A stretch of 64,000 bases of DNA, from the sequence record MN871444.1. One strand, given 5' to 3'. The translations under genes were made by a program, and so were the position numbers. The notes beneath the pieces are model-generated. The model did not search any database and was not told where the DNA came from. It saw only the letters and a list, made by a program, of their open reading frames with translations. Shown piece after piece: positions 849-9,681 of this stretch (the stretch's first letter is position 1; each line of letters opens with the position of its first letter).

Positions 849-1343
849 ATGGCTATGCCGTATACTCGCATTTATTCCATTGGCTATACCCGCGTCACTA
901 CAGATGCGGGTTCCATCATGGAACTCAATTCAGACAGTGAAGCAATTAGTCTGTTTGAGCAGCTGGCCCAGGGTGATGTCGGCCTGAGTAACTGGCCGTA
1001 CACTCGGAACGCCATTTCTTGCGCTAGTCGATTGTTTGGTTCTGATCTTCAGGAATGGTTTAACTCCCAAGCGTCCAACGATAGACTGACTGCAAATGCC
1101 CGTGGGTTGCTTAACGATACCGTGGGTTATATCAACACTGGGGTCCGTAAGGTATCTCTACAATCATGGGCACGTATTTTAATGCGTGAACAAGATATGG
1201 ACTTGCCTAAAGGTCCAGGGAAGATTGAGGTCATCACCGACCTCAGAACAAATGCGCTGACCCAATGGCTACGCCACGACCGGGGGCTTATTGACCTGGT
1301 GACTACCATGAATATTTTATTCGGTAAAGGGGTTAGTCAGTAA
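849..1343 (+). CDS. Conserved jumbo-phage hypothetical/virion protein
   Basis: 164 aa ORF with AAGGAG RBS, in the head-protein operon. Confidence 0.55.
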   Translation: MAMPYTRIYSIGYTRVTTDAGSIMELNSDSEAISLFEQLAQGDVGLSNWPYTRNAISCASRLFGSDLQEWFNSQASNDRLTANARGLLNDTVGYINTGVRKVSLQSWARILMREQDMDLPKGPGKIEVITDLRTNALTQWLRHDRGLIDLVTTMNILFGKGVSQ

Positions 1344-1432: not shown

Positions 1433-2860
1433 ATGGTAATGAAATTGAAAGGTCGCCGCATTAGCCTGGAAGAACTGGCTGAAGGCAATGTAGACGCAGG
1501 CGCCGCGGATGCAGTTGCAGCAGGCGACATCGAAACCCGTCTGGAAGTGGACACTCGCCCAGATGTAGACCTGGTTATCGCCGAAGGTGATATCGACGAC
1601 GCAGCCACCGATGTTGAAGCGGCTGAAGACAGCGTCGATACTCTGGTCGATACCGGCGAAGAGCTGGCTGTTATCCGCAATCAAATCGCCGACACTCTGG
1701 AAGATGAAGGTCTGGACGAAGTCAGTGCCGGCCTGGCTCGCACTGCCGCAAACATCGCACTGCGCCGCGTCGACAGCGAACTGGTGACTCCGGCCACCGA
1801 AAGCTTCGGCGGTTCCGCTACCGCGCGCATGGACAACACCCGCGTCACGATGGAAGCCATCGACGGTAAACTGCGCCAGATCTGGGAAGCGGTTAAGAAG
1901 GCACTGATCGAAGCCTGGAACGCCTTCAAGGCATTTGTAAAACAGCTGGTCGACGGTAAAGCTCGCGTGAAAGCACAAGCGCAGAAACTGCTCGAAACCA
2001 TCAAAGCGACTGCTGGCAATGCGGCTGGCGGTGAAAAGATCGAAATCAAAGACGCCACCCTGAAAATGATCGCGGTACAGCGTCCACTGGCTGCTGATTG
2101 GGAAACCCCGGTTGAAGCTATTCTGTCAGCTGTAGCTGCTGCCGATAAACTGGCCGAACAGGAAATCGCGTTTAACAACGGTCTGGCCGCGGCACTCCAG
2201 GGCGTCAACCCGGAAGCCGGCCTGGACGAAGCTACCCGTAAAGTACTGGGCTTCCTGTCCAGCTACAAACAAGCGGCTGAAGCGGCTGCGGCTGCATTCA
2301 AAACCATCGGTGGCGAAGCGAAAGCAGATATTGACGCGCCGGAAGGTTTCGAAGTGGTCGTATCCAACGTTCTGCCGGGCGGCTATGCGTTCTACGTTGT
2401 AGCGCCGAAAGAAGGCTCCGATCTGTCTCTGCCGGTTATCCTGGCGAACACCAAGTCCGGTATCACTGAAGTCGAAGTTACCGGTGAGTTCTCAGGCGAC
2501 GTAACCGCTGTATCCGCGGCATCTGCGATCTCGCTGCTGGAATCCGTCATCGCTGCGGTTGACGCGCTGGCCTCCGACAAACTCGAAGAGCTGGTTGCGG
2601 CACAAGACAAAGTGATCAAAGCAGGCGACGCGCTGGCCAATAAAGGCGGCGAAGCTGGCCCGCTGGGTTCACTGCTGCGTTCCCTGCCGCGCGTTGTTCG
2701 TGGCGTTGCCAAAGGTTCTGCCGATTGCGAAAAATACGCAGTCAAACTGTCTTTCGCGGTAGTCGAAGTTGTCCGTGCTTCTGCACGTACCTACGGCAAA
2801 ACCAGTACCGAAGTTGCAGAAGGTAGCGATGCCGCTAAAGGCACTGCTGCTGAAGCCTAA
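1433..2860 (+). CDS. Internal head (inner-body/ejection) protein, phiKZ gp93-family-like
   Basis: Acidic propeptide with ISLEE and VTME|AIDGKL protease-type sites, followed by the amphipathic helix WEAVKKALIEAW. Ala-rich, with strongly biased codons. Confidence 0.75.
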   Translation: MVMKLKGRRISLEELAEGNVDAGAADAVAAGDIETRLEVDTRPDVDLVIAEGDIDDAATDVEAAEDSVDTLVDTGEELAVIRNQIADTLEDEGLDEVSAGLARTAANIALRRVDSELVTPATESFGGSATARMDNTRVTMEAIDGKLRQIWEAVKKALIEAWNAFKAFVKQLVDGKARVKAQAQKLLETIKATAGNAAGGEKIEIKDATLKMIAVQRPLAADWETPVEAILSAVAAADKLAEQEIAFNNGLAAALQGVNPEAGLDEATRKVLGFLSSYKQAAEAAAAAFKTIGGEAKADIDAPEGFEVVVSNVLPGGYAFYVVAPKEGSDLSLPVILANTKSGITEVEVTGEFSGDVTAVSAASAISLLESVIAAVDALASDKLEELVAAQDKVIKAGDALANKGGEAGPLGSLLRSLPRVVRGVAKGSADCEKYAVKLSFAVVEVVRASARTYGKTSTEVAEGSDAAKGTAAEA

Positions 2861-2882
2861 AGCATTGCATTAACACTGCTTA

Positions 2883-2910
2883 GGGCGGAGGGTGACCTCC
2901 GCCCTTTTGT
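2883..2910 (+). terminator. Rho-independent terminator
   Basis: GGGCGGAGG-GTGA-CCTCCGCCC followed by TTTTGT. Confidence 0.8.
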
Positions 2911-2932
2911 GTTATCGATAGAGGAATAAATA

Positions 2933-5110
2933 ATGGCTGGATCAAAATTATTACGTATCCCTACTCACGTTAAGCGCACTAACGTTTCTCTCGAAGAACG
3001 CGAGCCCGCTGCTGAACGTGACCCGGATATTGTTGACCTGTCTCAAACGCCTGATGATGTTAATCCTGATGATGCAGGCACCACTGCGGCTGCTTCTTCA
3101 GAGGCGACATCTCAAAGCAGCGACGTAGCGAGTGATGCTGACGTCACTGAGACCGACACTGACGCGGGTGTTGCGTCTACAGAAGCTACGGGTGATGTTG
3201 CTACCGGGGCAGAACCCGATGCCGCCGCCTCCGCAGATGCGGATGCTGCCAGTGCAGACCAGACCCAAACCGACGAATCTGATGCCGTTGGCGGTGATGA
3301 AGCCACTTCTGCGGCTGCCGATGTTGGTGCAACCACCTCTGCCGAAGCAACACCTCCGGCCGATGATAGTACGGTAGATAGCGGAAATGATGCTGCCAAC
3401 GCTGACCTGGATAACCAGGGTGACATTACTCCCCCTGAAGAAGCTCAATCCACCGACTCGGATCTTGGCGGTGATACCTCAACCGATGTTGGTGCTGCCG
3501 ACCTGGGTGCGGTAGCGGATGGTGATACCTCCGCGGCTACCGACACTGGTACTGGGGAAATGGACTCAAGCACCGATGCAAGCGCGACGGCTGCTACTGA
3601 GCCGTCGACTCCTGTTGAAGAAGCTAACCCGGTTGAAAATCCGGCGGATGATATTCCGGAAGAAGCGCTTACTTCAGCCTGGGTTCAAGGTGTAGCCGTG
3701 GATAACCACGATGACGTCACCGACCTCAAAGATGGCGAAGAAGAACTGGATATTTACCAACACAATGAAAATGAGCTTCATGATGCTGCGACCAGTTTGG
3801 AAGAACTGCGCAACTGTTGTGTTCCGGTCGCCGTTGTTACGCACACTGAAACCGATGACCTCAGTACTCCGGTACAAACCGAAATGGTTTCGGATATTAG
3901 CGACAAAGCAGTAGACCTGCTGACTTCTACGGCGAATCAGACACTTTCTCGCCTGGGTAGTCAATTAGATCTGCCGGCTGCTACTGAGTCGGTCGGTACT
4001 CCAGCTGAACGCCTTCAGATTACGCTGGAAGCCATTGATGGTAAACTCAAACAAATTTGGGAAGCCATCAAGAAAATGGCAATTGCCGCCTGGGAAGCGT
4101 TTGTTAACTTTGTTAAAGGCGTCTTTGACAAGGCACAGCGCATTCGTAATCAGGTGGCTGGTCTGCGTAAATTCGTCGCTCAGTTCAAAGGGGCTACGCC
4201 AGAAAATGCTGAGTTTGAAAATAATTCAGTATGGGCAAGCTGCTGCGTGGAACGGGCTGGCCACAAACCTGAATTTGATGCTGCGGAAGTATCGACCCTA
4301 TTTGAAACCTACGTCAGTGCAGCTAAACCGTACCTGCTGAACGCAAGTAAGGCGCTGGCACCAGGACTCGGTCTGGTGTTTGACCGCGTCGCGGCGATTG
4401 ACCCGGAAAAAGCCGAAACCCGACAGGCTATGTGGGATGCTTTCGCCAACCTGATGGGTCGCTATAGCAAGTCGGTTGTTATGGTGACTAAGATGGTTGG
4501 TGGCGACACTAAATTGGATGATTCCGATCTGGCTGGTTTCGGCCCAACCCCTGGGTTGATGTCGATTTATTCTAACGCGGGCCTTGGTGGCGGATACCTG
4601 GCCGTGGACATCATCGACTCCAGCGTCAAGGTAGATATTGCGGCACCAGCTTTCTGGAACCATGCGGCATCGCGATACGTCCGCGGTCACGTAGTCGTTC
4701 CAGAGAACGCTAAAGTGCCGACCCTGTCTGCTGACCAGATGGAAGCCATGTTGGATCAGATCGATGAGGCGATGGAAACCGTACTGGAATATCGCTCGAC
4801 ATTTAAAACGTTTGAGCAACAGTTGGCGAAAGGGCAGCAAGCCACTACGAAACTGGCCAGCAAAATTCCAGAAAATGCCTCCCGAAATGATGCAAACGTC
4901 GCTATCTTTGCTTCGATGAAACTGGTGCCTAAACTGACTGGGTTCAACCAGGCAGTCATTAATGGCCTGTACGTTCAATCCAGTGCGATGCTCCAATACA
5001 TCGTAGCATCCACCAAACAGTATTCGGCCAATGAAAGCGCTGTCGATTCAACAGCGCAGACAGTAGCCGATGAAGGGGCGGCTAAATTACCGGCTCCTAA
5101 AGCAGCATAA
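2933..5110 (+). CDS. Internal head protein with long acidic N-terminal propeptide (gp93-family-like)
   Basis: About 300 aa D/A/T-rich N-terminus with VSLEE and TSLEE, then ITLE|AIDGKLKQIWEAIKK, nearly identical to the motif in 1433..2860. Confidence 0.75.
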   Translation: MAGSKLLRIPTHVKRTNVSLEEREPAAERDPDIVDLSQTPDDVNPDDAGTTAAASSEATSQSSDVASDADVTETDTDAGVASTEATGDVATGAEPDAAASADADAASADQTQTDESDAVGGDEATSAAADVGATTSAEATPPADDSTVDSGNDAANADLDNQGDITPPEEAQSTDSDLGGDTSTDVGAADLGAVADGDTSAATDTGTGEMDSSTDASATAATEPSTPVEEANPVENPADDIPEEALTSAWVQGVAVDNHDDVTDLKDGEEELDIYQHNENELHDAATSLEELRNCCVPVAVVTHTETDDLSTPVQTEMVSDISDKAVDLLTSTANQTLSRLGSQLDLPAATESVGTPAERLQITLEAIDGKLKQIWEAIKKMAIAAWEAFVNFVKGVFDKAQRIRNQVAGLRKFVAQFKGATPENAEFENNSVWASCCVERAGHKPEFDAAEVSTLFETYVSAAKPYLLNASKALAPGLGLVFDRVAAIDPEKAETRQAMWDAFANLMGRYSKSVVMVTKMVGGDTKLDDSDLAGFGPTPGLMSIYSNAGLGGGYLAVDIIDSSVKVDIAAPAFWNHAASRYVRGHVVVPENAKVPTLSADQMEAMLDQIDEAMETVLEYRSTFKTFEQQLAKGQQATTKLASKIPENASRNDANVAIFASMKLVPKLTGFNQAVINGLYVQSSAMLQYIVASTKQYSANESAVDSTAQTVADEGAAKLPAPKAA

Positions 5111-5113
5111 CTC

Positions 5114-5141
5114 GAGGGGGCAATAGCCCCCTCTTATGCCG
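5114..5141 (+). terminator. Rho-independent terminator
   Basis: GAGGGGGC-AATA-GCCCCCTC followed by TTATGCCG. Confidence 0.7.
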
Positions 5142-5192
5142 ATTCTCATCCTATGACCATTTCTTCATCAAGCAGCATTAGAGGGCGACATT

Positions 5193-6485
5193 ATGACTGG
5201 GTTGGTGAACACCCCACAATCAGATTTACCGGACTCCCCGACGTCGTACGCCGAGGTCCATCAGATGGTGACCGAACTCGCGCACCAGCAAAACGACATC
5301 AGCAAAAAAGACCATCAAGTACAAGAACATACTCAGGTCGTCGATGAACTTCGCAATACCGGGGATATGATAGCAGCATTAGGGGCTATCGTTAAATACA
5401 ATATCGATGGTAAGGCAATGACCCCATTTCAGTCTTCGCTGATGAAAAATGCGTTATGGCATAGTGGGGCTATTAGTCAAGAGGCCAATGATAGCGATAC
5501 CATCATCTCCATGGAGTCTTTACGAAAAATCCTGGCCGATATATGGGTTGCAATTAAAAACAGCTTAAAACGGCTTTTAGAGCGTTTAATTGACTTTTTA
5601 ACGGCCTACTACGGAATGCTGAATACCGTTGAAGATTTGGCATTGAAATTAAAAGCCATCCTCAAAGAAAATAACTGGCAGTCAGTGACAGTGACTTCTT
5701 TCTCTTCCAGTAATGCCCGCAAGCTTGCAGTCGGTGGTAAACTCAAATCAACCTGGGTAGAAGACACAGCTACGGTACTCAAGGAGATGGCTACGTCCGA
5801 CAAAGATGTAATCGATGCCGTGGGTGATTTTAATCTTGAAGCAACCAACCAAGTAATTAAAACTCTGAGAACTGATAAACTTCCTGATTTTAACTGGGGT
5901 GTTTTATCTGGCACGATCGGTACCTTGCGTCGAACTATCACCTCCACCATTTCTCGGTATGGGGTAACAACGTACGCAAAACCCTTCGGCGTAGACACTT
6001 ATTACTGTAGTGGGGTGCTACCCGGTGAATGGCAATTGGGGTGTAAGCAAATCCCAGTTCAGAATGCCGGTAGCCGACATGAAGCGGCTAAGGCAATCAT
6101 TGAAGGTATGGGTGACCAGTACTTCGTTATTTTGTCCCGAGAACAAACCGGGCCAGATGAACTCCCACTACCGTCGTTGAATGTGATTGAATCCGGATGC
6201 GATGATATCCTGAAAATAATCAGTATACTGAAAGAGTCCACTCAGAAACTGGATGTGGAGCTTAATCAGGCACTGAAAAAATCAATTGGCGTCATCGACG
6301 GACTCATGTCGAGGGTGCAGAACAGTGTCGAGGTTAAAGACCGAGATGCCGTGGACTTTGTCATGCGGGCAACGCAAATCTCCAGCAAACTCAGTCGCCC
6401 TTATTTGCAGGTATTGGGGAATATCCTACCAGCGTATACCCGGGCATTATTTCAGTGTGTTGCGGTTTATCGTAACGGAGCATAA
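5193..6485 (+). CDS. Internal head protein paralogue
   Basis: ISME|SLRKILADIWVAIKNSL motif, homologous to the two preceding genes. Confidence 0.65.
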   Translation: MTGLVNTPQSDLPDSPTSYAEVHQMVTELAHQQNDISKKDHQVQEHTQVVDELRNTGDMIAALGAIVKYNIDGKAMTPFQSSLMKNALWHSGAISQEANDSDTIISMESLRKILADIWVAIKNSLKRLLERLIDFLTAYYGMLNTVEDLALKLKAILKENNWQSVTVTSFSSSNARKLAVGGKLKSTWVEDTATVLKEMATSDKDVIDAVGDFNLEATNQVIKTLRTDKLPDFNWGVLSGTIGTLRRTITSTISRYGVTTYAKPFGVDTYYCSGVLPGEWQLGCKQIPVQNAGSRHEAAKAIIEGMGDQYFVILSREQTGPDELPLPSLNVIESGCDDILKIISILKESTQKLDVELNQALKKSIGVIDGLMSRVQNSVEVKDRDAVDFVMRATQISSKLSRPYLQVLGNILPAYTRALFQCVAVYRNGA

Positions 6486-6490
6486 CGTTG

Positions 6491-6517
6491 AGGGAGGCTT
6501 CGGCCTCCCTTTTATGC
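6491..6517 (+). terminator. Rho-independent terminator
   Basis: AGGGAGGC-TTCG-GCCTCCCT followed by TTTATGC. Confidence 0.85.
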
Positions 6518-6579
6518 TTAATATAAAAAAATACTATTCAAGATTACAATTTGAGTACACTTGGGGATGAAACATAAAA

Positions 6580-6775
6580 GACCTAAGGAAACGTTCCGTG
6601 CGAAGCACTCCACGTTACTGTTACTAATAAAAAGATAAGATAAATATATTTAATAGGAAAGAAAAAAGATCTTAGATTTGGGGGTTTGGGGGAGGGGTAG
6701 GAGGAGCAAAGCTCCTCCGTAGGGGAGGACCATAAAAACATAATTGTACGGGGAAGGGTTTATCTCCCTTCCCAA
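6580..6775. other. Structured non-coding region (mini-hairpin, purine-rich tract, four G-runs, two GC hairpins)
   Basis: GTGC-GAA-GCAC at 6598-6608. G-runs at 6680-84, 6688-92, 6694-97 and 6722-25. Hairpins at 6700-6718 and 6751-6773. Confidence 0.6.
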
Positions 6776-6839
6776 ATATGCTGACCAATCGCAATTCAGA
6801 ATTATCGTGTGTTTAACTCCACTAAAAGGTATTACTATT

Positions 6840-7277
6840 ATGAAACATGCTATTGTCCCTACACAAGCACCTAAAATCAGTATGATGGTAGGTTCCCAAT
6901 CTTTGGAGACTGGCGTCAAACTCACTGTAGAGGGTAGTGGTCGTATTGATTTCTCACCCGTAGTATCCCAGGTGCCTACATCGAATAATGGATTGCAATC
7001 GACGGCGTATTGGTCAGAATGCGAACCATCGACCTACTTCCTTAGTTTGGGTCAATACTCATGTACGCCATGTGGGATCATTAAATTCCATGAGGGGAAT
7101 ATTGACGAACCTAACGGCACGACGGTGGAATCCTTACTTCACGTTGTTGAACATCGTCTCGAGCACCATCAAACCGGCGAGTACCCCTGTAAGGAAAATG
7201 CAGCAGCGTTGAGTGCTGTACGGGCCGCTTTAGTCGCATTACATCATCGCAGTGAAAAACAAGGAAAAGTATCATGA
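6840..7277 (+). CDS. tad1: Tad1-like (Acb2/Tad1 hairpin family) anti-defence signal-sponge protein
   Basis: The C-half IKFHEG...NGTTVESLLHVVEHRLEHHQTGEYPCKENAAALSAVRAAL matches the recalled Tad1 pattern IKFQxG...xGxxxxxLLxIVxxRLxxFQxGxFxxRENAxALxxVEEAL. ATG 6840 (AAAAGGT RBS) is preferred over 6744. Confidence 0.65.
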   Translation: MKHAIVPTQAPKISMMVGSQSLETGVKLTVEGSGRIDFSPVVSQVPTSNNGLQSTAYWSECEPSTYFLSLGQYSCTPCGIIKFHEGNIDEPNGTTVESLLHVVEHRLEHHQTGEYPCKENAAALSAVRAALVALHHRSEKQGKVS

Positions 7278-8137
7278 TTCAAGTTGTATCCGCATTTCCT
7301 GGCTGTGGGAAGAGTTGGTTTCATCGGCAATTTACTGATGTTCTGGATAGCGATTCCAGTGGTTTTGATAAATCAGCATTCCCGCAAAACTATATCTGCC
7401 ATATTCGCAATACGATGGTCCAAGATAAATGCATCTTCGTAAGCAGTCATGGGATGGTCAGAGCAGCTATGATTGACTCCGGGATAGAATATATCCTGGT
7501 TTATCCTAGCCATGACATCAAGGACGAATTTCTTGACCGATATCGTAAACGTGGCAGCGAACCCCAATTCATTGAACTGCTGGACAAAAACTGGGATGCG
7601 TGGATTGGCGAATGTCAGGGGCAGCAAGGATGTGTGCATGTCGTACTGCAATCGGGAGAGTACCTCGCAGACGTCATCGAATATGACCCGCTCTACCGCC
7701 GGTTTACCGTTAAAGACGGGGCTACTACGTTTACCCCTCAACCACACAAACACAAAACGGAATACGTTGCTGTAGATTTTGATGGCACCATCGTCACTAA
7801 CGAATGGCCTGAGGTAGGTAAAGATACGGGCGCAATTGCGGTGCTGCGGGAACTACTCAGTGCGGGATGTAAGTTAATCCTACATACGGTCAGGGAAGGG
7901 AAGGAGCTTAATGAGGCGCTGGCGTATTGCGCAAAACATGGAATCGATTTCATTGGTGTCAATGAAAATCGTGAGTTTCCTCCTGGTGGAACCGTCACAG
8001 ATAAACCGTATGCCGACGTATATATCGATGATCGTGCGATGGGTTGCCCGCTTACCCACAACCCACTCATACATAAAGAACCGTATGTAGATTGGCTTGC
8101 GATTAGAAAACAACTGGAGAAACGAGGAGTATTATAA
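7274..8137 (+). CDS. P-loop nucleotide-kinase-like / HAD-phosphatase fusion
   Basis: N-terminal Walker A AFPGCGKS. C-terminal HAD motif I VDFDGT, motif II LHT, and KPYADVYIDDR (motifs III/IV). ATGA overlap with the upstream gene. Confidence 0.75.
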   Translation: MIQVVSAFPGCGKSWFHRQFTDVLDSDSSGFDKSAFPQNYICHIRNTMVQDKCIFVSSHGMVRAAMIDSGIEYILVYPSHDIKDEFLDRYRKRGSEPQFIELLDKNWDAWIGECQGQQGCVHVVLQSGEYLADVIEYDPLYRRFTVKDGATTFTPQPHKHKTEYVAVDFDGTIVTNEWPEVGKDTGAIAVLRELLSAGCKLILHTVREGKELNEALAYCAKHGIDFIGVNENREFPPGGTVTDKPYADVYIDDRAMGCPLTHNPLIHKEPYVDWLAIRKQLEKRGVL

Positions 8138-9681
8138 TGCCGAGTATCGGACTTAACCTCCCTGAGGGGTATGAGTTAATCTCACGCCCTGTTGCTCAGG
8201 GTATTGCCCAGCGGGTAATATCACACTTAGGGATTCAGGATAAAGTCAGCATCCTGTTCCCAGGCGATGCTGAGGTAGCGGCGCAAGCCGGCAGTACATT
8301 GGGAGAACAAAAGGAAGGGGGTCCGAATACACGCTTTGCCAGTACTCAAAGACTTCAGGTCAGTATGAATGAACAGGTTCTGGAGGGAGAGGTATTAGCT
8401 ACCCCTACTTGGCAAATAAACCACCCTCCCATTTTCTCAGACCCTAAATTGGGCATCACTATGAAGCCCATTTACCATCTCGTGGAAGGGGTATTATCTT
8501 TCACTTATCGTGCAGCCGACCAAACAAGTGCCGAACAGTGGAAGAATAGATTGCTGCGGTACATTTCCCAAAACCGCGCAGAAATGTATCACGAGATTAT
8601 TTATGCGTACGCCTTACCGGGACAGTTTATTACTATCTTGGCAGAAATTCACAAGCTGCGTGAAACGGTAGCCCCATATGGGGATACGGTCATTGATTAC
8701 CTGCGCAACCATTTCAGTGGCCGCGTAGATGTTAAAACCAACATGGCTGGGAAGGGTAGTATTTTTGCGGTCGACGAAATCCAAAAAGGGGTTATCGGGT
8801 GGTTTGATTGGACCATCCCACCAACTCCAGAAAAAACCAGCGAAGAAAGTACCTATACCGCGACCTTTGAATTCCATTACCAATATCAGCAGGTTACTGG
8901 GGTTCATCTGAAATATCCGATTATCGTACACCAACAGCTGTTGCCTAGTAATCTGCGGCCGCTGAATTTATCTTACGAACTTAATCGCAGTTTACCCACC
9001 TATATGTCGTTGGCTAAACAAGAGTATCAGGCGGTTAAGAAAGAAACAGACGGTTATTACGCGACCCAGGAAGGGATTCGTTACCCCGACTTTGATGAGT
9101 GGGCACCTGATCATGTAATCGCCAATCAAATCCCAGTGTTGACTGTAATGTTAACAATCTCTGCGGATGACCCGAGATTTCTCTTAAACATTAAAGAATT
9201 GTCTCATTGGAATTTTAACCCTGATATTCTCGAATTTATGTTGGCTGAACCTAAATGGGTTACGCTGACTAAATTTACTCCAGTTTTAATCACGTTGTAT
9301 TGTGATGGCGATAAATGCGATGACCAGATAGTGCAGATGGATTCTTCTGGCGACGTGCGCACAACCATTGATTTGGACTTAAGACGACAATATCATGTTG
9401 TCATCAGCGCAATGTCGGATCTATCACAATTGAACAAAAACAATACCGATCTGTTGCGCCAGTATCCTAAAGCCGCCATGGTAGTGCTATACGCACTGGA
9501 ACCACGTTTGGAATCCTGGGGTAAATTACCCGAAGTACTGGGTGATAAACTGGTATCGCGTGTAGGGTGGTTAGAGGCGATTAATGTTATTAAAACGACC
9601 TCCCCTATTTTCCGCACGGCAAAATACTACGCGCGTTTTACGGTTGGGTCTTATATCCTGGCTACAGCGGAGAAAAAATAA
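8137..9681 (+). CDS. phiKZ-like virion structural protein (tail/baseplate region)
   Basis: 514 aa, first gene of the conserved block leading to the hub-like gene. TAATG coupling. Assignment by synteny. Confidence 0.55.
   Translation: MPSIGLNLPEGYELISRPVAQGIAQRVISHLGIQDKVSILFPGDAEVAAQAGSTLGEQKEGGPNTRFASTQRLQVSMNEQVLEGEVLATPTWQINHPPIFSDPKLGITMKPIYHLVEGVLSFTYRAADQTSAEQWKNRLLRYISQNRAEMYHEIIYAYALPGQFITILAEIHKLRETVAPYGDTVIDYLRNHFSGRVDVKTNMAGKGSIFAVDEIQKGVIGWFDWTIPPTPEKTSEESTYTATFEFHYQYQQVTGVHLKYPIIVHQQLLPSNLRPLNLSYELNRSLPTYMSLAKQEYQAVKKETDGYYATQEGIRYPDFDEWAPDHVIANQIPVLTVMLTISADDPRFLLNIKELSHWNFNPDILEFMLAEPKWVTLTKFTPVLITLYCDGDKCDDQIVQMDSSGDVRTTIDLDLRRQYHVVISAMSDLSQLNKNNTDLLRQYPKAAMVVLYALEPRLESWGKLPEVLGDKLVSRVGWLEAINVIKTTSPIFRTAKYYARFTVGSYILATAEKK

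What the first reader, a model, noticed from the sequence alone, without database searches (positions are those of the whole stretch)
6840..7277. Divergent Tad1-like signal sponge in a phiKZ-like jumbo phage
Seen: the C-terminal ~70 aa follow the Tad1 hairpin pattern (IKF-x-x-G, LL-x-x-V-x-x-RL, Q-x-G, KEN-A-x-AL). Compared with Tad1 as I recall it, the aromatic before Q is replaced by H, the MW pair is absent, the Arg-rich C-terminal tail is cut to SEKQGKVS, and there is an unrelated ~70 aa N-terminus. Established: Tad1 sequesters Thoeris gcADPR and some CBASS cyclic nucleotides, and nucleus-forming phages evade DNA-targeting systems but not signal-based abortive infection. Inference: this is an anti-defence sponge, possibly with new ligand specificity.
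Basis: partly seen in the sequence, partly recalled or inferred. Interest (0 to 1): 0.8.

Follow-up and report, generated by a model that had tools for sequence, protein, structure and literature searches.

The report
Tad1-family sponge gene in jumbo phage
The 145-residue gene is a real, selected, previously unlabelled member of the Tad1 family of phage proteins that soak up bacterial immune signals, in a nucleus-forming Klebsiella/Serratia jumbo phage; phiKZ is already known to carry a Tad1, so this is a useful annotation rather than a surprise.

Summary
The window is Serratia phage KpGz_1 (Eowynvirus group, Chimalliviridae). ORF 6840-7277 (+, 145 aa) is a real gene (dN/dS about 0.1). It belongs to the Tad1 family. 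It matches Tad1 crystal structures and phiKZ gp184 (the phiKZ Tad1) directly by sequence. A profile of the lineage finds 1085 relatives. A profile-profile comparison with those relatives gives 99.9% probability. The 20 best PDB matches of the AlphaFold model are all Tad1.

Only residues 1-37 are extra and predicted disordered; residues 38-83 form the Tad1 beta-sheet.

Two of the four mutated pocket residues of CbTad1 are kept (N120, R137). The aromatic residue is His (6% of relatives). The second Arg is Gln, and the C-terminal lid is missing.

The gene follows three phiKZ-type internal-head-protein genes. It sits behind its own terminator and a conserved 350-nt leader, and its stop overlaps the start of a P-loop/HAD-like gene.

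Most likely it is a nucleotide-signal sponge. Ligand, oligomer and virion packaging are untested. Novelty: new member of a known kind. Interest is modest.

The parts
6840..7277 (+). Tad1-family ORF, 145 aa plus stop; the stop overlaps the ATG of the next gene (ATGA)
   Evidence: ORF; homology; fold; dN/dS 0.09-0.11
6840..6950 (+). Codons 1-37: lineage-specific N-terminal extension, predicted disordered but conserved within the lineage (G34-P40 invariant); candidate capsid-targeting segment or propeptide (inferred)
   Evidence: pLDDT <50 for residues 1-37; invariant columns; dN/dS 0.15-0.18; no similarity to the phiKZ gp184 N-terminus
6951..7088 (+). Codons 38-83: four predicted beta-strands, the counterpart of the Tad1 N-terminal antiparallel sheet; contains the lineage-specific C75-x-x-C78
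7125..7262 (+). Codons 96-141: two-helix hairpin (Acb2/Tad1 hairpin domain) carrying H110, K118, N120, S125, R137 and Q141
6486..6839 (+). Conserved non-coding leader: terminator-like hairpin 6490-6511 closing the upstream gene, invariant 32-nt block 6585-6616, G-rich run plus hairpin 6680-6718, second hairpin 6750-6773, conserved stretch before the ribosome-binding site
7274..8137 (+). Translationally coupled downstream gene, 287 aa: P-loop N-domain plus HAD-like C-domain; found together with the Tad1-like gene in all relatives examined
5193..6485 (+). Upstream neighbour: phiKZ-type internal head protein (PF12699), third of three tandem paralogs (1433-2860, 2933-5110, 5193-6485)
8137..9681 (+). 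Conserved Chimalliviridae gene (514 aa, function unknown) that bounds the variable slot on the downstream side

Best explanation
The ORF encodes a Tad1-family sponge. The proposed mechanism is that the beta-sheet plus helical-hairpin core oligomerises and traps host nucleotide immune signals, so the defence effector is never switched on. The signals would be type I Thoeris gcADPR/3'cADPR and/or CBASS cyclic oligonucleotides. The pockets would be lined by H110, N120 and R137.

Shown: family membership, predicted fold, purifying selection, and conservation of two of the four mutated pocket residues.

Inferred: oligomerisation, ligand binding and ligand identity.

A further inferred step, which I put at about 0.35: as with phiKZ gp184/Tad1, the protein is loaded into the capsid through its 37-residue N-terminal extension and enters the cell with the DNA.
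For: Sequence:
- phmmer hits phiKZ gp184 (E 6.6e-5) and all Tad1 crystal entries (E about 4e-4).
- The protein matches the same three PHROGs as gp184.
- Close homologs carry a precomputed PF24729 hit, the Acb2/Tad1 hairpin domain.
- The lineage profile finds 1085 relatives.
- A profile of those relatives hits Tad1 structures at E 1e-28 and gp184 at 2.5e-22, with no Acb2 hit.
- hhalign gives 99.9% probability.

Fold:
- The AlphaFold model has four strands and two helices. The top 20 PDB matches are all Cm/CbTad1, probability 1.0, target-normalised TM-score (TMt) 0.60-0.69, and the next hit has E 0.9.
- The best matches among predicted viral structures (BFVD) are Tad1-type proteins.

Pocket: N120 (Asn in 97% of relatives) and R137 (Arg in 99%) are kept. 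His at the F82 position occurs in 6% of relatives. The residue roles come from the mutagenesis reported.

Selection: dN/dS is 0.09-0.11.

Precedent: phiKZ Tad1 is reported to block Thoeris and CBASS and to be virion-borne. Inhibition of Thoeris and CBASS is widespread among tested Tad1 homologs.

Context: the gene lies next to internal-head-protein genes. A gp175-type head protease is present in the sibling phage KpHz_2.
Against: - The counterpart of CbTad1 R113 is Gln141, while this column is Arg in 92% of relatives.
- The C-terminal lid that covers the ligand in CbTad1 is absent. Only 4 of 148 relatives have a tail this short.
- The beta4-alpha1 loop is shorter than in most relatives.
- Residues at the published hexamer interface differ, although these columns vary across the whole family.
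- 19 of 84 tested sponge homologs inhibited none of seven systems.
- No binding, oligomer or expression data exist for this lineage.
- Against packaging: the N-terminus has no similarity to that of gp184. The gene has its own terminator and leader and is coupled to an enzyme-like gene. 'Structural protein' in the Eowyn record is an unsupported label.
Confidence: 0.62

Rival explanations
1. It is a sponge whose pocket has been retuned. With His for the stacking Phe, Gln for the second Arg, no lid, and lineage-specific Cys/His residues, it would bind a signal outside the published Tad1 spectrum rather than gcADPR or 2',3'-type cGAMP. Candidates include His-ADPR, N7-cADPR and cyclic mononucleotides.
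For: - The pocket differences are fixed in all lineage members.
- C75, C78, H101 and H136 are rare or absent at these columns in relatives.
- Related sponge families have been shown to switch specificity through small pocket changes.
Against: - In the 84-protein survey, Tad1 homologs inhibited only CBASS and type I Thoeris. The new specificities were found in Tad2 and Acb2.
- His at the F82 position and short tails both occur elsewhere in the family.
- Nothing here identifies a ligand.
Confidence: 0.2
2. It is a Tad1-fold protein that no longer binds signals and serves only as a minor capsid or internal-head component of the virion. This would parallel phiKZ gp184, which occupies a place in the vertex-binding complex.
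For: - Loss of the R113 counterpart and of the lid.
- The gene lies between internal-head-protein and head-tail-joining genes, and a PhiKZ_gp91-like vertex-complex gene lies 5.5 kb upstream.
- The Eowyn ortholog is labelled 'structural protein'.
Against: - The near-invariant family residues, including N120, R137, Q111 and G113, are all kept under strong purifying selection. A mere filler protein would not be expected to keep them.
- Goslar and PCH45 do without any counterpart at this position.
- gp184 is dispensable in phiKZ.
- The slot is variable between genera.
Confidence: 0.13
3. It is an Acb2-type protein, or the match is a chance match to a helical hairpin, and the protein is not Tad1.
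For: - The Pfam domain is shared by Acb2 and Tad1.
- A direct Pfam scan of the window protein gave no hit.
Against: - No Acb2 structure appears in either PDB search, while every Tad1 entry does.
- The predicted beta-sheet plus hairpin matches Tad1 over 110-123 columns.
- hhalign gives E 3.8e-32.
Confidence: 0.02

Closest known systems
phiKZ gp184 (Tad1 of Pseudomonas phage phiKZ; PDB 8Y6V chain I)
   Same: It is the best direct PDB sequence hit (E 6.6e-5; 37% identity over 46 residues by BLASTP). It matches the same three PHROG families. Both are Tad1 domains at the C-terminus of a protein with an N-terminal extension, in a Chimalliviridae jumbo phage.
   Different: - gp184 is 230 aa with an extension of about 110 residues. 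The window protein has 37 extra residues with no detectable similarity to it.
- gp184 keeps the second Arg and the Gly/Glu-rich tail; the window protein does not.
- The genomic positions are not syntenic: gp184 follows the tail lysin region, while this gene follows the internal-head-protein cluster.
- tblastn with gp184 does not find the Eowynvirus genes at E<=1e-3.
CbTad1 and CmTad1 (Clostridium prophage Tad1; PDB 7UAV/7UAW/8SMD, 8KBB-8KBH)
   Same: The fold (antiparallel sheet plus two-helix hairpin) and the hairpin sequence pattern are shared. The pocket Asn and first Arg are conserved. Lys and Ser sit at the positions of the Arg/Thr pair that binds cyclic trinucleotide phosphates.
   Different: His replaces F82, Gln replaces R113, the lid (residues 116-122) is absent, the beta4-alpha1 loop is shorter, the hexamer-interface residues differ, and there are 37 extra N-terminal residues.
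Acb2 (anti-CBASS 2)
   Same: It shares the helical hairpin domain that Pfam PF24729 defines jointly for Acb2 and Tad1, and it works by the same sponge principle.
   Different: No Acb2 structure is hit by the protein or by its family profile. The window protein has the Tad1 beta-sheet in front of the hairpin.

Membership tests
Tad1 (Thoeris anti-defence 1) family | Significant sequence/profile homology to Tad1 proteins (Acb2/Tad1 hairpin domain, PF24729) | tested here: met
   - phmmer against Tad1 PDB chains gives E about 4e-4, and against gp184 6.6e-5.
- There are 1085 relatives.
- Their profile hits Tad1 structures at E 1e-28.
- hhalign gives 99.9% probability.
- Homologs of 69-97% identity carry a precomputed PF24729 hit, though a weak one.
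- The direct Pfam scan of the window protein was negative.
Tad1 (Thoeris anti-defence 1) family | Fold: N-terminal antiparallel beta-sheet followed by two C-terminal helices | tested here: met
   The AlphaFold2 model has strands 39-43, 54-58, 65-70 and 76-83 and helices 96-112 and 118-141. pLDDT is 85-95 in the helices and 50-75 in the sheet. The top 20 Foldseek PDB hits are all Tad1. Caveat: this is a prediction, built from an alignment made mostly of Tad1 relatives.
Tad1 (Thoeris anti-defence 1) family | gcADPR / cyclic-dinucleotide pocket residues (CbTad1 F82, N92, R109, R113) | tested here: inconclusive
   N120 and R137 are kept. H110 replaces F82 (His in 6% of relatives). Q141 replaces R113 (Arg in 92% of relatives).
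Tad1 (Thoeris anti-defence 1) family | C-terminal lid that orders over the ligand (CbTad1 116-122). This is a feature of the characterised members and not part of the Pfam definition. | tested here: not met
   The protein ends 8 residues after R137. 118 of 148 relatives have 12-20 residues there, and 4 have 8 or fewer. I do not treat this as a defining feature, because short-tailed relatives exist in the family.
Tad1 (Thoeris anti-defence 1) family | Cyclic-trinucleotide site (CbTad1 R90/T97) and hexamer (trimer of dimers) | tested here: inconclusive
   K118 and S125 are conservative replacements, but both columns vary widely across relatives, as do the interface columns. No multimer prediction was available, so the oligomeric state could not be tested.
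Tad1 (Thoeris anti-defence 1) family | Sequestration of immune signalling nucleotides | not testable with these tools
   No biochemical data exist for this lineage. Public names for its members are 'hypothetical protein' or 'structural protein'.
phiKZ gp184-type virion-packaged Tad1 | N-terminal capsid-bound region homologous to that of gp184 | tested here: not met
   BLASTP aligns only the hairpin. In the alignment, the first 110 or so residues of gp184 have no counterpart.
phiKZ gp184-type virion-packaged Tad1 | Presence in virions and processing by the head maturation protease | not testable with these tools
   The support is indirect only:
- The neighbours are head-module genes.
- A gp175-type protease is present in the sibling phage KpHz_2 (E 1e-31).
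- Ser/Thr-x-Glu motifs occur in residues 21-31, but about 0.4 such motifs are expected by chance in 37 residues (my estimate).
Acb2 | Homology to Acb2 structures and an all-helical fold | tested here: not met
   No Acb2 chain appears among the PDB hits of the protein or of its family profile. A beta-sheet is predicted.

The most novel reading that the evidence does not exclude
The lineage-fixed changes could give this jumbo-phage Tad1 a ligand that no Tad1 is known to bind. Those changes are His for the stacking Phe, Gln for the second pocket Arg, no lid, and a C-x-x-C plus extra His residues found almost nowhere else in the family. The conserved leader and the coupled P-loop/HAD-like gene would then form a dedicated two-gene counter-defence cassette.
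Probability: 0.2. Interest if true: 0.65.

Novelty: new member of a known kind. Interest (0 to 1): 0.35.

Why it matters
A 2026 review calls Tad1 of phiKZ the only anti-defence protein described in jumbo phages. This result shows that a second genus of Chimalliviridae, infecting enterobacteria, carries its own very divergent Tad1. Public records label it only 'hypothetical' or 'structural' protein.

Three uses follow:
- It gives a natural variant of the Tad1 pocket, without a lid and without one Arg, for studies of how specificity is set.
- It offers a short 37-residue N-terminal extension for asking how such proteins might be loaded into giant capsids.
- It fixes an annotation for Klebsiella jumbo phages, a group being characterised for phage therapy.

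Tried and rejected
Searches that gave nothing or were unavailable:
- Direct Pfam, PADLOC and NCBIfam scans of the window protein gave no usable hit. Family placement therefore rests on phmmer, PHROGs, profiles and fold.
- tblastn against 50,697 phage records finds only the three Eowynvirus-group phages, even at E<=10.
- The published Nature version of the Tad1/Tad2 paper is not held, and the preprint does not mention phiKZ. The phiKZ Tad1 facts therefore come from secondary papers.
- Local scripts could not read loci L003 and L007. The protease and leader comparisons were done with the hosted tools instead.

Ideas rejected:
- The longer TTG start at 6744, used by one JGI gene call of 177 aa, is rejected. 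One-base indels between 6744 and 6840 in relatives break that frame.
- A 23-codon ORF in the leader (my own reading) is rejected, because its ATG is absent from the divergent relative.
- Rfam has no family for the leader. The sroE hit is sub-threshold and is just the terminator. Folding gives z = -1.84, which is not decisive.
- The large hits P0005 and P0029 in the profile search are repeat or composition artefacts.
- BLASTP cannot relate the internal-head-protein paralogs to those of PCH45; Pfam does.
- Acb2 membership is rejected.

Full report
**What is there.**
- The window matches Serratia phage KpGz_1 (MN871444.1, 269 kb, host recorded as Klebsiella pneumoniae) at 100% identity, with the same coordinates.
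- Its relatives are KpHz_2 and Klebsiella phage vB_KvM-Eowyn, at 83-84% nucleotide identity. Eowynvirus is classified in Chimalliviridae.
- A further member of the genus is reported to encode a nuclear shell protein, PhuZ and multisubunit RNA polymerases.
- So the 'phiKZ-like jumbo phage' context is right.
- The ORF at 6840-7277 (+) starts with ATG, encodes 145 aa, and its TGA overlaps the ATG of the next gene.

**It is a real gene.**
- Against Eowyn and KpHz_2, dN/dS is 0.09-0.11 over the whole ORF. It is 0.15-0.18 for codons 1-37 and 0.08-0.10 for codons 38-145.
- About 25 sequence variants of 69-97% identity occur in metagenome assemblies. All are 145-146 aa, apart from one 177-aa JGI gene call.
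- That longer TTG start at 6744 is not supported. Relatives carry one-base indels between 6744 and 6840.

**It belongs to the Tad1 family.**
- phmmer against all PDB sequences returns phiKZ gp184 from the capsid structure 8Y6V (E 6.6e-5). It then returns every Tad1 crystal entry (7UAV/7UAW/8SMD, 8KBB-8KBH; E about 4e-4) and nothing else credible.
- gp184 is the Tad1 of phiKZ. The window protein and gp184 hit the same three PHROG families.
- A direct Pfam scan is negative. Close homologs, however, carry a precomputed weak hit to PF24729, which a paper identifies as the Acb2/Tad1 hairpin domain.
- A profile of the five lineage sequences, searched against 1.84 billion representatives, finds 1085 proteins at E<=1e-3. 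Nearly all align to residues 75-141, and some align from residue 40-48.
- A profile dominated by those relatives hits all Tad1 structures at E about 1e-28 over their full length. It hits gp184 residues 112-226 at E 2.5e-22 and hits no Acb2.
- hhalign of the lineage alone against the relatives alone gives 99.9% probability, E 3.8e-32, for residues 58-140.

**Fold.**
- The AlphaFold2 model was built on the 53-sequence alignment. Residues 1-37 are disordered (pLDDT <50).
- Strands fall at 39-43, 54-58, 65-70 and 76-83, and helices at 96-112 and 118-141 (pLDDT 85-95).
- Foldseek against the PDB gives CmTad1 and CbTad1 as the top 20 hits: probability 1.0, 110-123 aligned columns, target-normalised TM-score (TMt) 0.60-0.69. 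The next hit has E 0.9.
- Against predicted viral structures, the matches after the Eowyn ortholog are proteins labelled 'Acb2/Tad1 hairpin domain-containing', or 'ABC transporter ATPase', the label that PDB entry 7UAV (CbTad1) also carries.
Tyr66 is Tyr in 93% of relatives.

**Functional residues.** These were mapped through the CbTad1 alignment printed and the mutagenesis described. The last column gives shares among 149 distant relatives.

| CbTad1 residue | Window residue | Role in CbTad1 | Shares among relatives |
|---|---|---|---|
| F82 | H110 | gcADPR / cyclic-dinucleotide pocket | Phe 87%, His 6% |
| N92 | N120 | pocket | Asn 97% |
| R109 | R137 | pocket | Arg 99% |
| R113 | Q141 | pocket | Arg 92%, Gln never seen |
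| R90 / T97 | K118 / S125 | cyclic-trinucleotide phosphates | both columns variable |
| M104 / W105 | V132 / A133 | hexamer interface (counterparts of CmTad1 M102/W103) | Trp only 17% |

- The protein ends 8 residues after R137. 118 of 148 relatives have 12-20 residues there and only 4 have 8 or fewer.
- The lid that orders over the ligand in CbTad1 (residues 116-122) is therefore missing. phiKZ gp184 keeps both the second Arg and the tail.
- Cys75, Cys78, His101 and His136 are lineage-specific or rare in the family. I could not inspect the model coordinates to see whether they cluster.

**Context.**
- Upstream lie a PhiKZ_gp91-like gene (849-1343) and three tandem phiKZ-type internal-head-protein genes (PF12699; 1433-2860, 2933-5110, 5193-6485).
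- Downstream lie a 287-aa P-loop plus HAD-like gene (7274-8137), a 514-aa gene conserved across Chimalliviridae (8137-9681), and a head-tail joining protein.
- The same order holds in two metagenome contigs whose Tad1-like protein is 78% identical.
- In Serratia phage PCH45, the slot between the internal-head-protein genes and the 514-aa gene holds an unrelated 340-aa gene. In Erwinia phage RAY the synteny breaks at that point.
- The Tad1-like gene and its partner therefore occupy a variable slot inside a conserved virion module.
- The gene is preceded by a strong terminator-like hairpin (6490-6511) and a non-coding leader of about 330 nt. Parts of this leader are more conserved than the flanking genes.

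**How it most likely works.** I commit to a nucleotide-signal sponge with confidence 0.62.
- The hairpin and sheet would build an oligomer. Its inter-subunit pockets would sequester Thoeris and/or CBASS signals.
- This follows from family membership, the retained near-invariant residues under purifying selection, the phiKZ precedent, and the finding that inhibition of Thoeris and CBASS is widespread among tested Tad1 homologs.
- Ligand identity is open, because of Q141, H110 and the missing lid.
- Virion packaging, as for gp184 (a cleaved minor capsid protein reported to be injected), is possible at about 0.35.
  - For packaging: the head-module neighbourhood, a conserved and disordered N-terminal extension, and a gp175-type protease in the sibling phage.
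  - For packaging, weakly: related proteases cleave after A-x-E, or S/A/G-x-E for phiKZ (my own knowledge). The S/T-x-E motifs at residues 21-31 are a lead only, since about 0.4 are expected by chance.
  - Against packaging: no similarity to the gp184 N-terminus, and a separate transcription unit.

**Rivals.**
- A retuned ligand specificity: 0.2.
- A purely structural Tad1-fold virion protein: 0.13.
- Acb2 or a chance match: 0.02, effectively excluded.

**Novelty.** This is a new, unlabelled member of a known kind. The family has 1,587 catalogued non-redundant homologs, and a jumbo-phage Tad1 is already published. The lid-less pocket and the short extension are the points worth following.

Noticed in passing
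window 6486-6839: The non-coding leader upstream of the Tad1-like gene is 90% identical to Eowyn overall and 94% over 6520-6740, against 64-87% for the neighbouring coding sequences. In a relative whose Tad1-like protein is only 78% identical, a 32-nt block (6585-6616) and a G-rich run plus hairpin (6680-6718, loop variable) remain invariant. A second hairpin (6750-6773) keeps its stem through a change on both sides. The leader matches no Rfam family, is unique in the window, and occurs only in Eowynvirus-group phages. It could be a promoter, a 5' UTR or a small RNA; this is undecided. Other short intergenic regions here are also highly conserved (94-96%).
   Followed up: partly
window 7274-8137 (+): This 287-aa gene has a start that overlaps the stop of the Tad1-like gene. 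It has an N-terminal P-loop domain (phrog_4182) and a C-terminal HAD-like domain (phrog_1238; PDB 2OBB, E 4e-13; DxDxT-type motif). In Eowyn it is annotated 'phosphoheptose isomerase', which looks like a misnomer. The kinase-plus-phosphatase layout recalls polynucleotide kinase-phosphatases; that is my own knowledge and was not tested. It co-occurs with the Tad1-like gene in every relative seen.
   Followed up: partly
window 6840-7277, residues C75, C78, H101, H110, H136: The lineage has an invariant C-x-x-C and extra histidines at columns where other Tad1 relatives rarely or never have them. A metal site or a disulfide is conceivable.
   Followed up: partly
window 1433-6485: There are three tandem paralogs of phiKZ-type internal head proteins (PF12699). 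The 725-aa middle one is much the most divergent between KpGz_1 and Eowyn (64% nucleotide identity).
   Followed up: partly
window 849-1343 (+): This 164-aa gene matches phrog_8047 (virion structural protein), and its ortholog on contig L007 is marked PF25618 PhiKZ_gp91. gp91 belongs to the same capsid vertex-binding complex as gp184/Tad1 in phiKZ.
   Followed up: no
L006 (Serratia phage PCH45) 4898-5920: PCH45 has an unrelated 340-aa gene with no Pfam hit in the slot that holds the Tad1-like gene and the 287-aa gene in KpGz_1. The slot between the internal-head-protein cluster and the conserved 514-aa gene looks like a variable accessory position.
   Followed up: partly
GenBank records MN871444.1 / MN871445.1: Both records are named 'Serratia phage' but list Klebsiella pneumoniae as host. 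They carry no annotation, and KpHz_2 is flagged UNVERIFIED_ORG. Public names for the lineage's protein are only 'hypothetical protein' or 'structural protein'.
   Followed up: no
profile search, proteins P0005 (1301 aa) and P0029 (756 aa): These two long repeat-rich proteins scored well against residues 61-107 of the profile in 8-12 stretches. They also hit many unrelated Pfam families with no single significant stretch, so they are treated as composition or repeat artefacts.
   Followed up: yes
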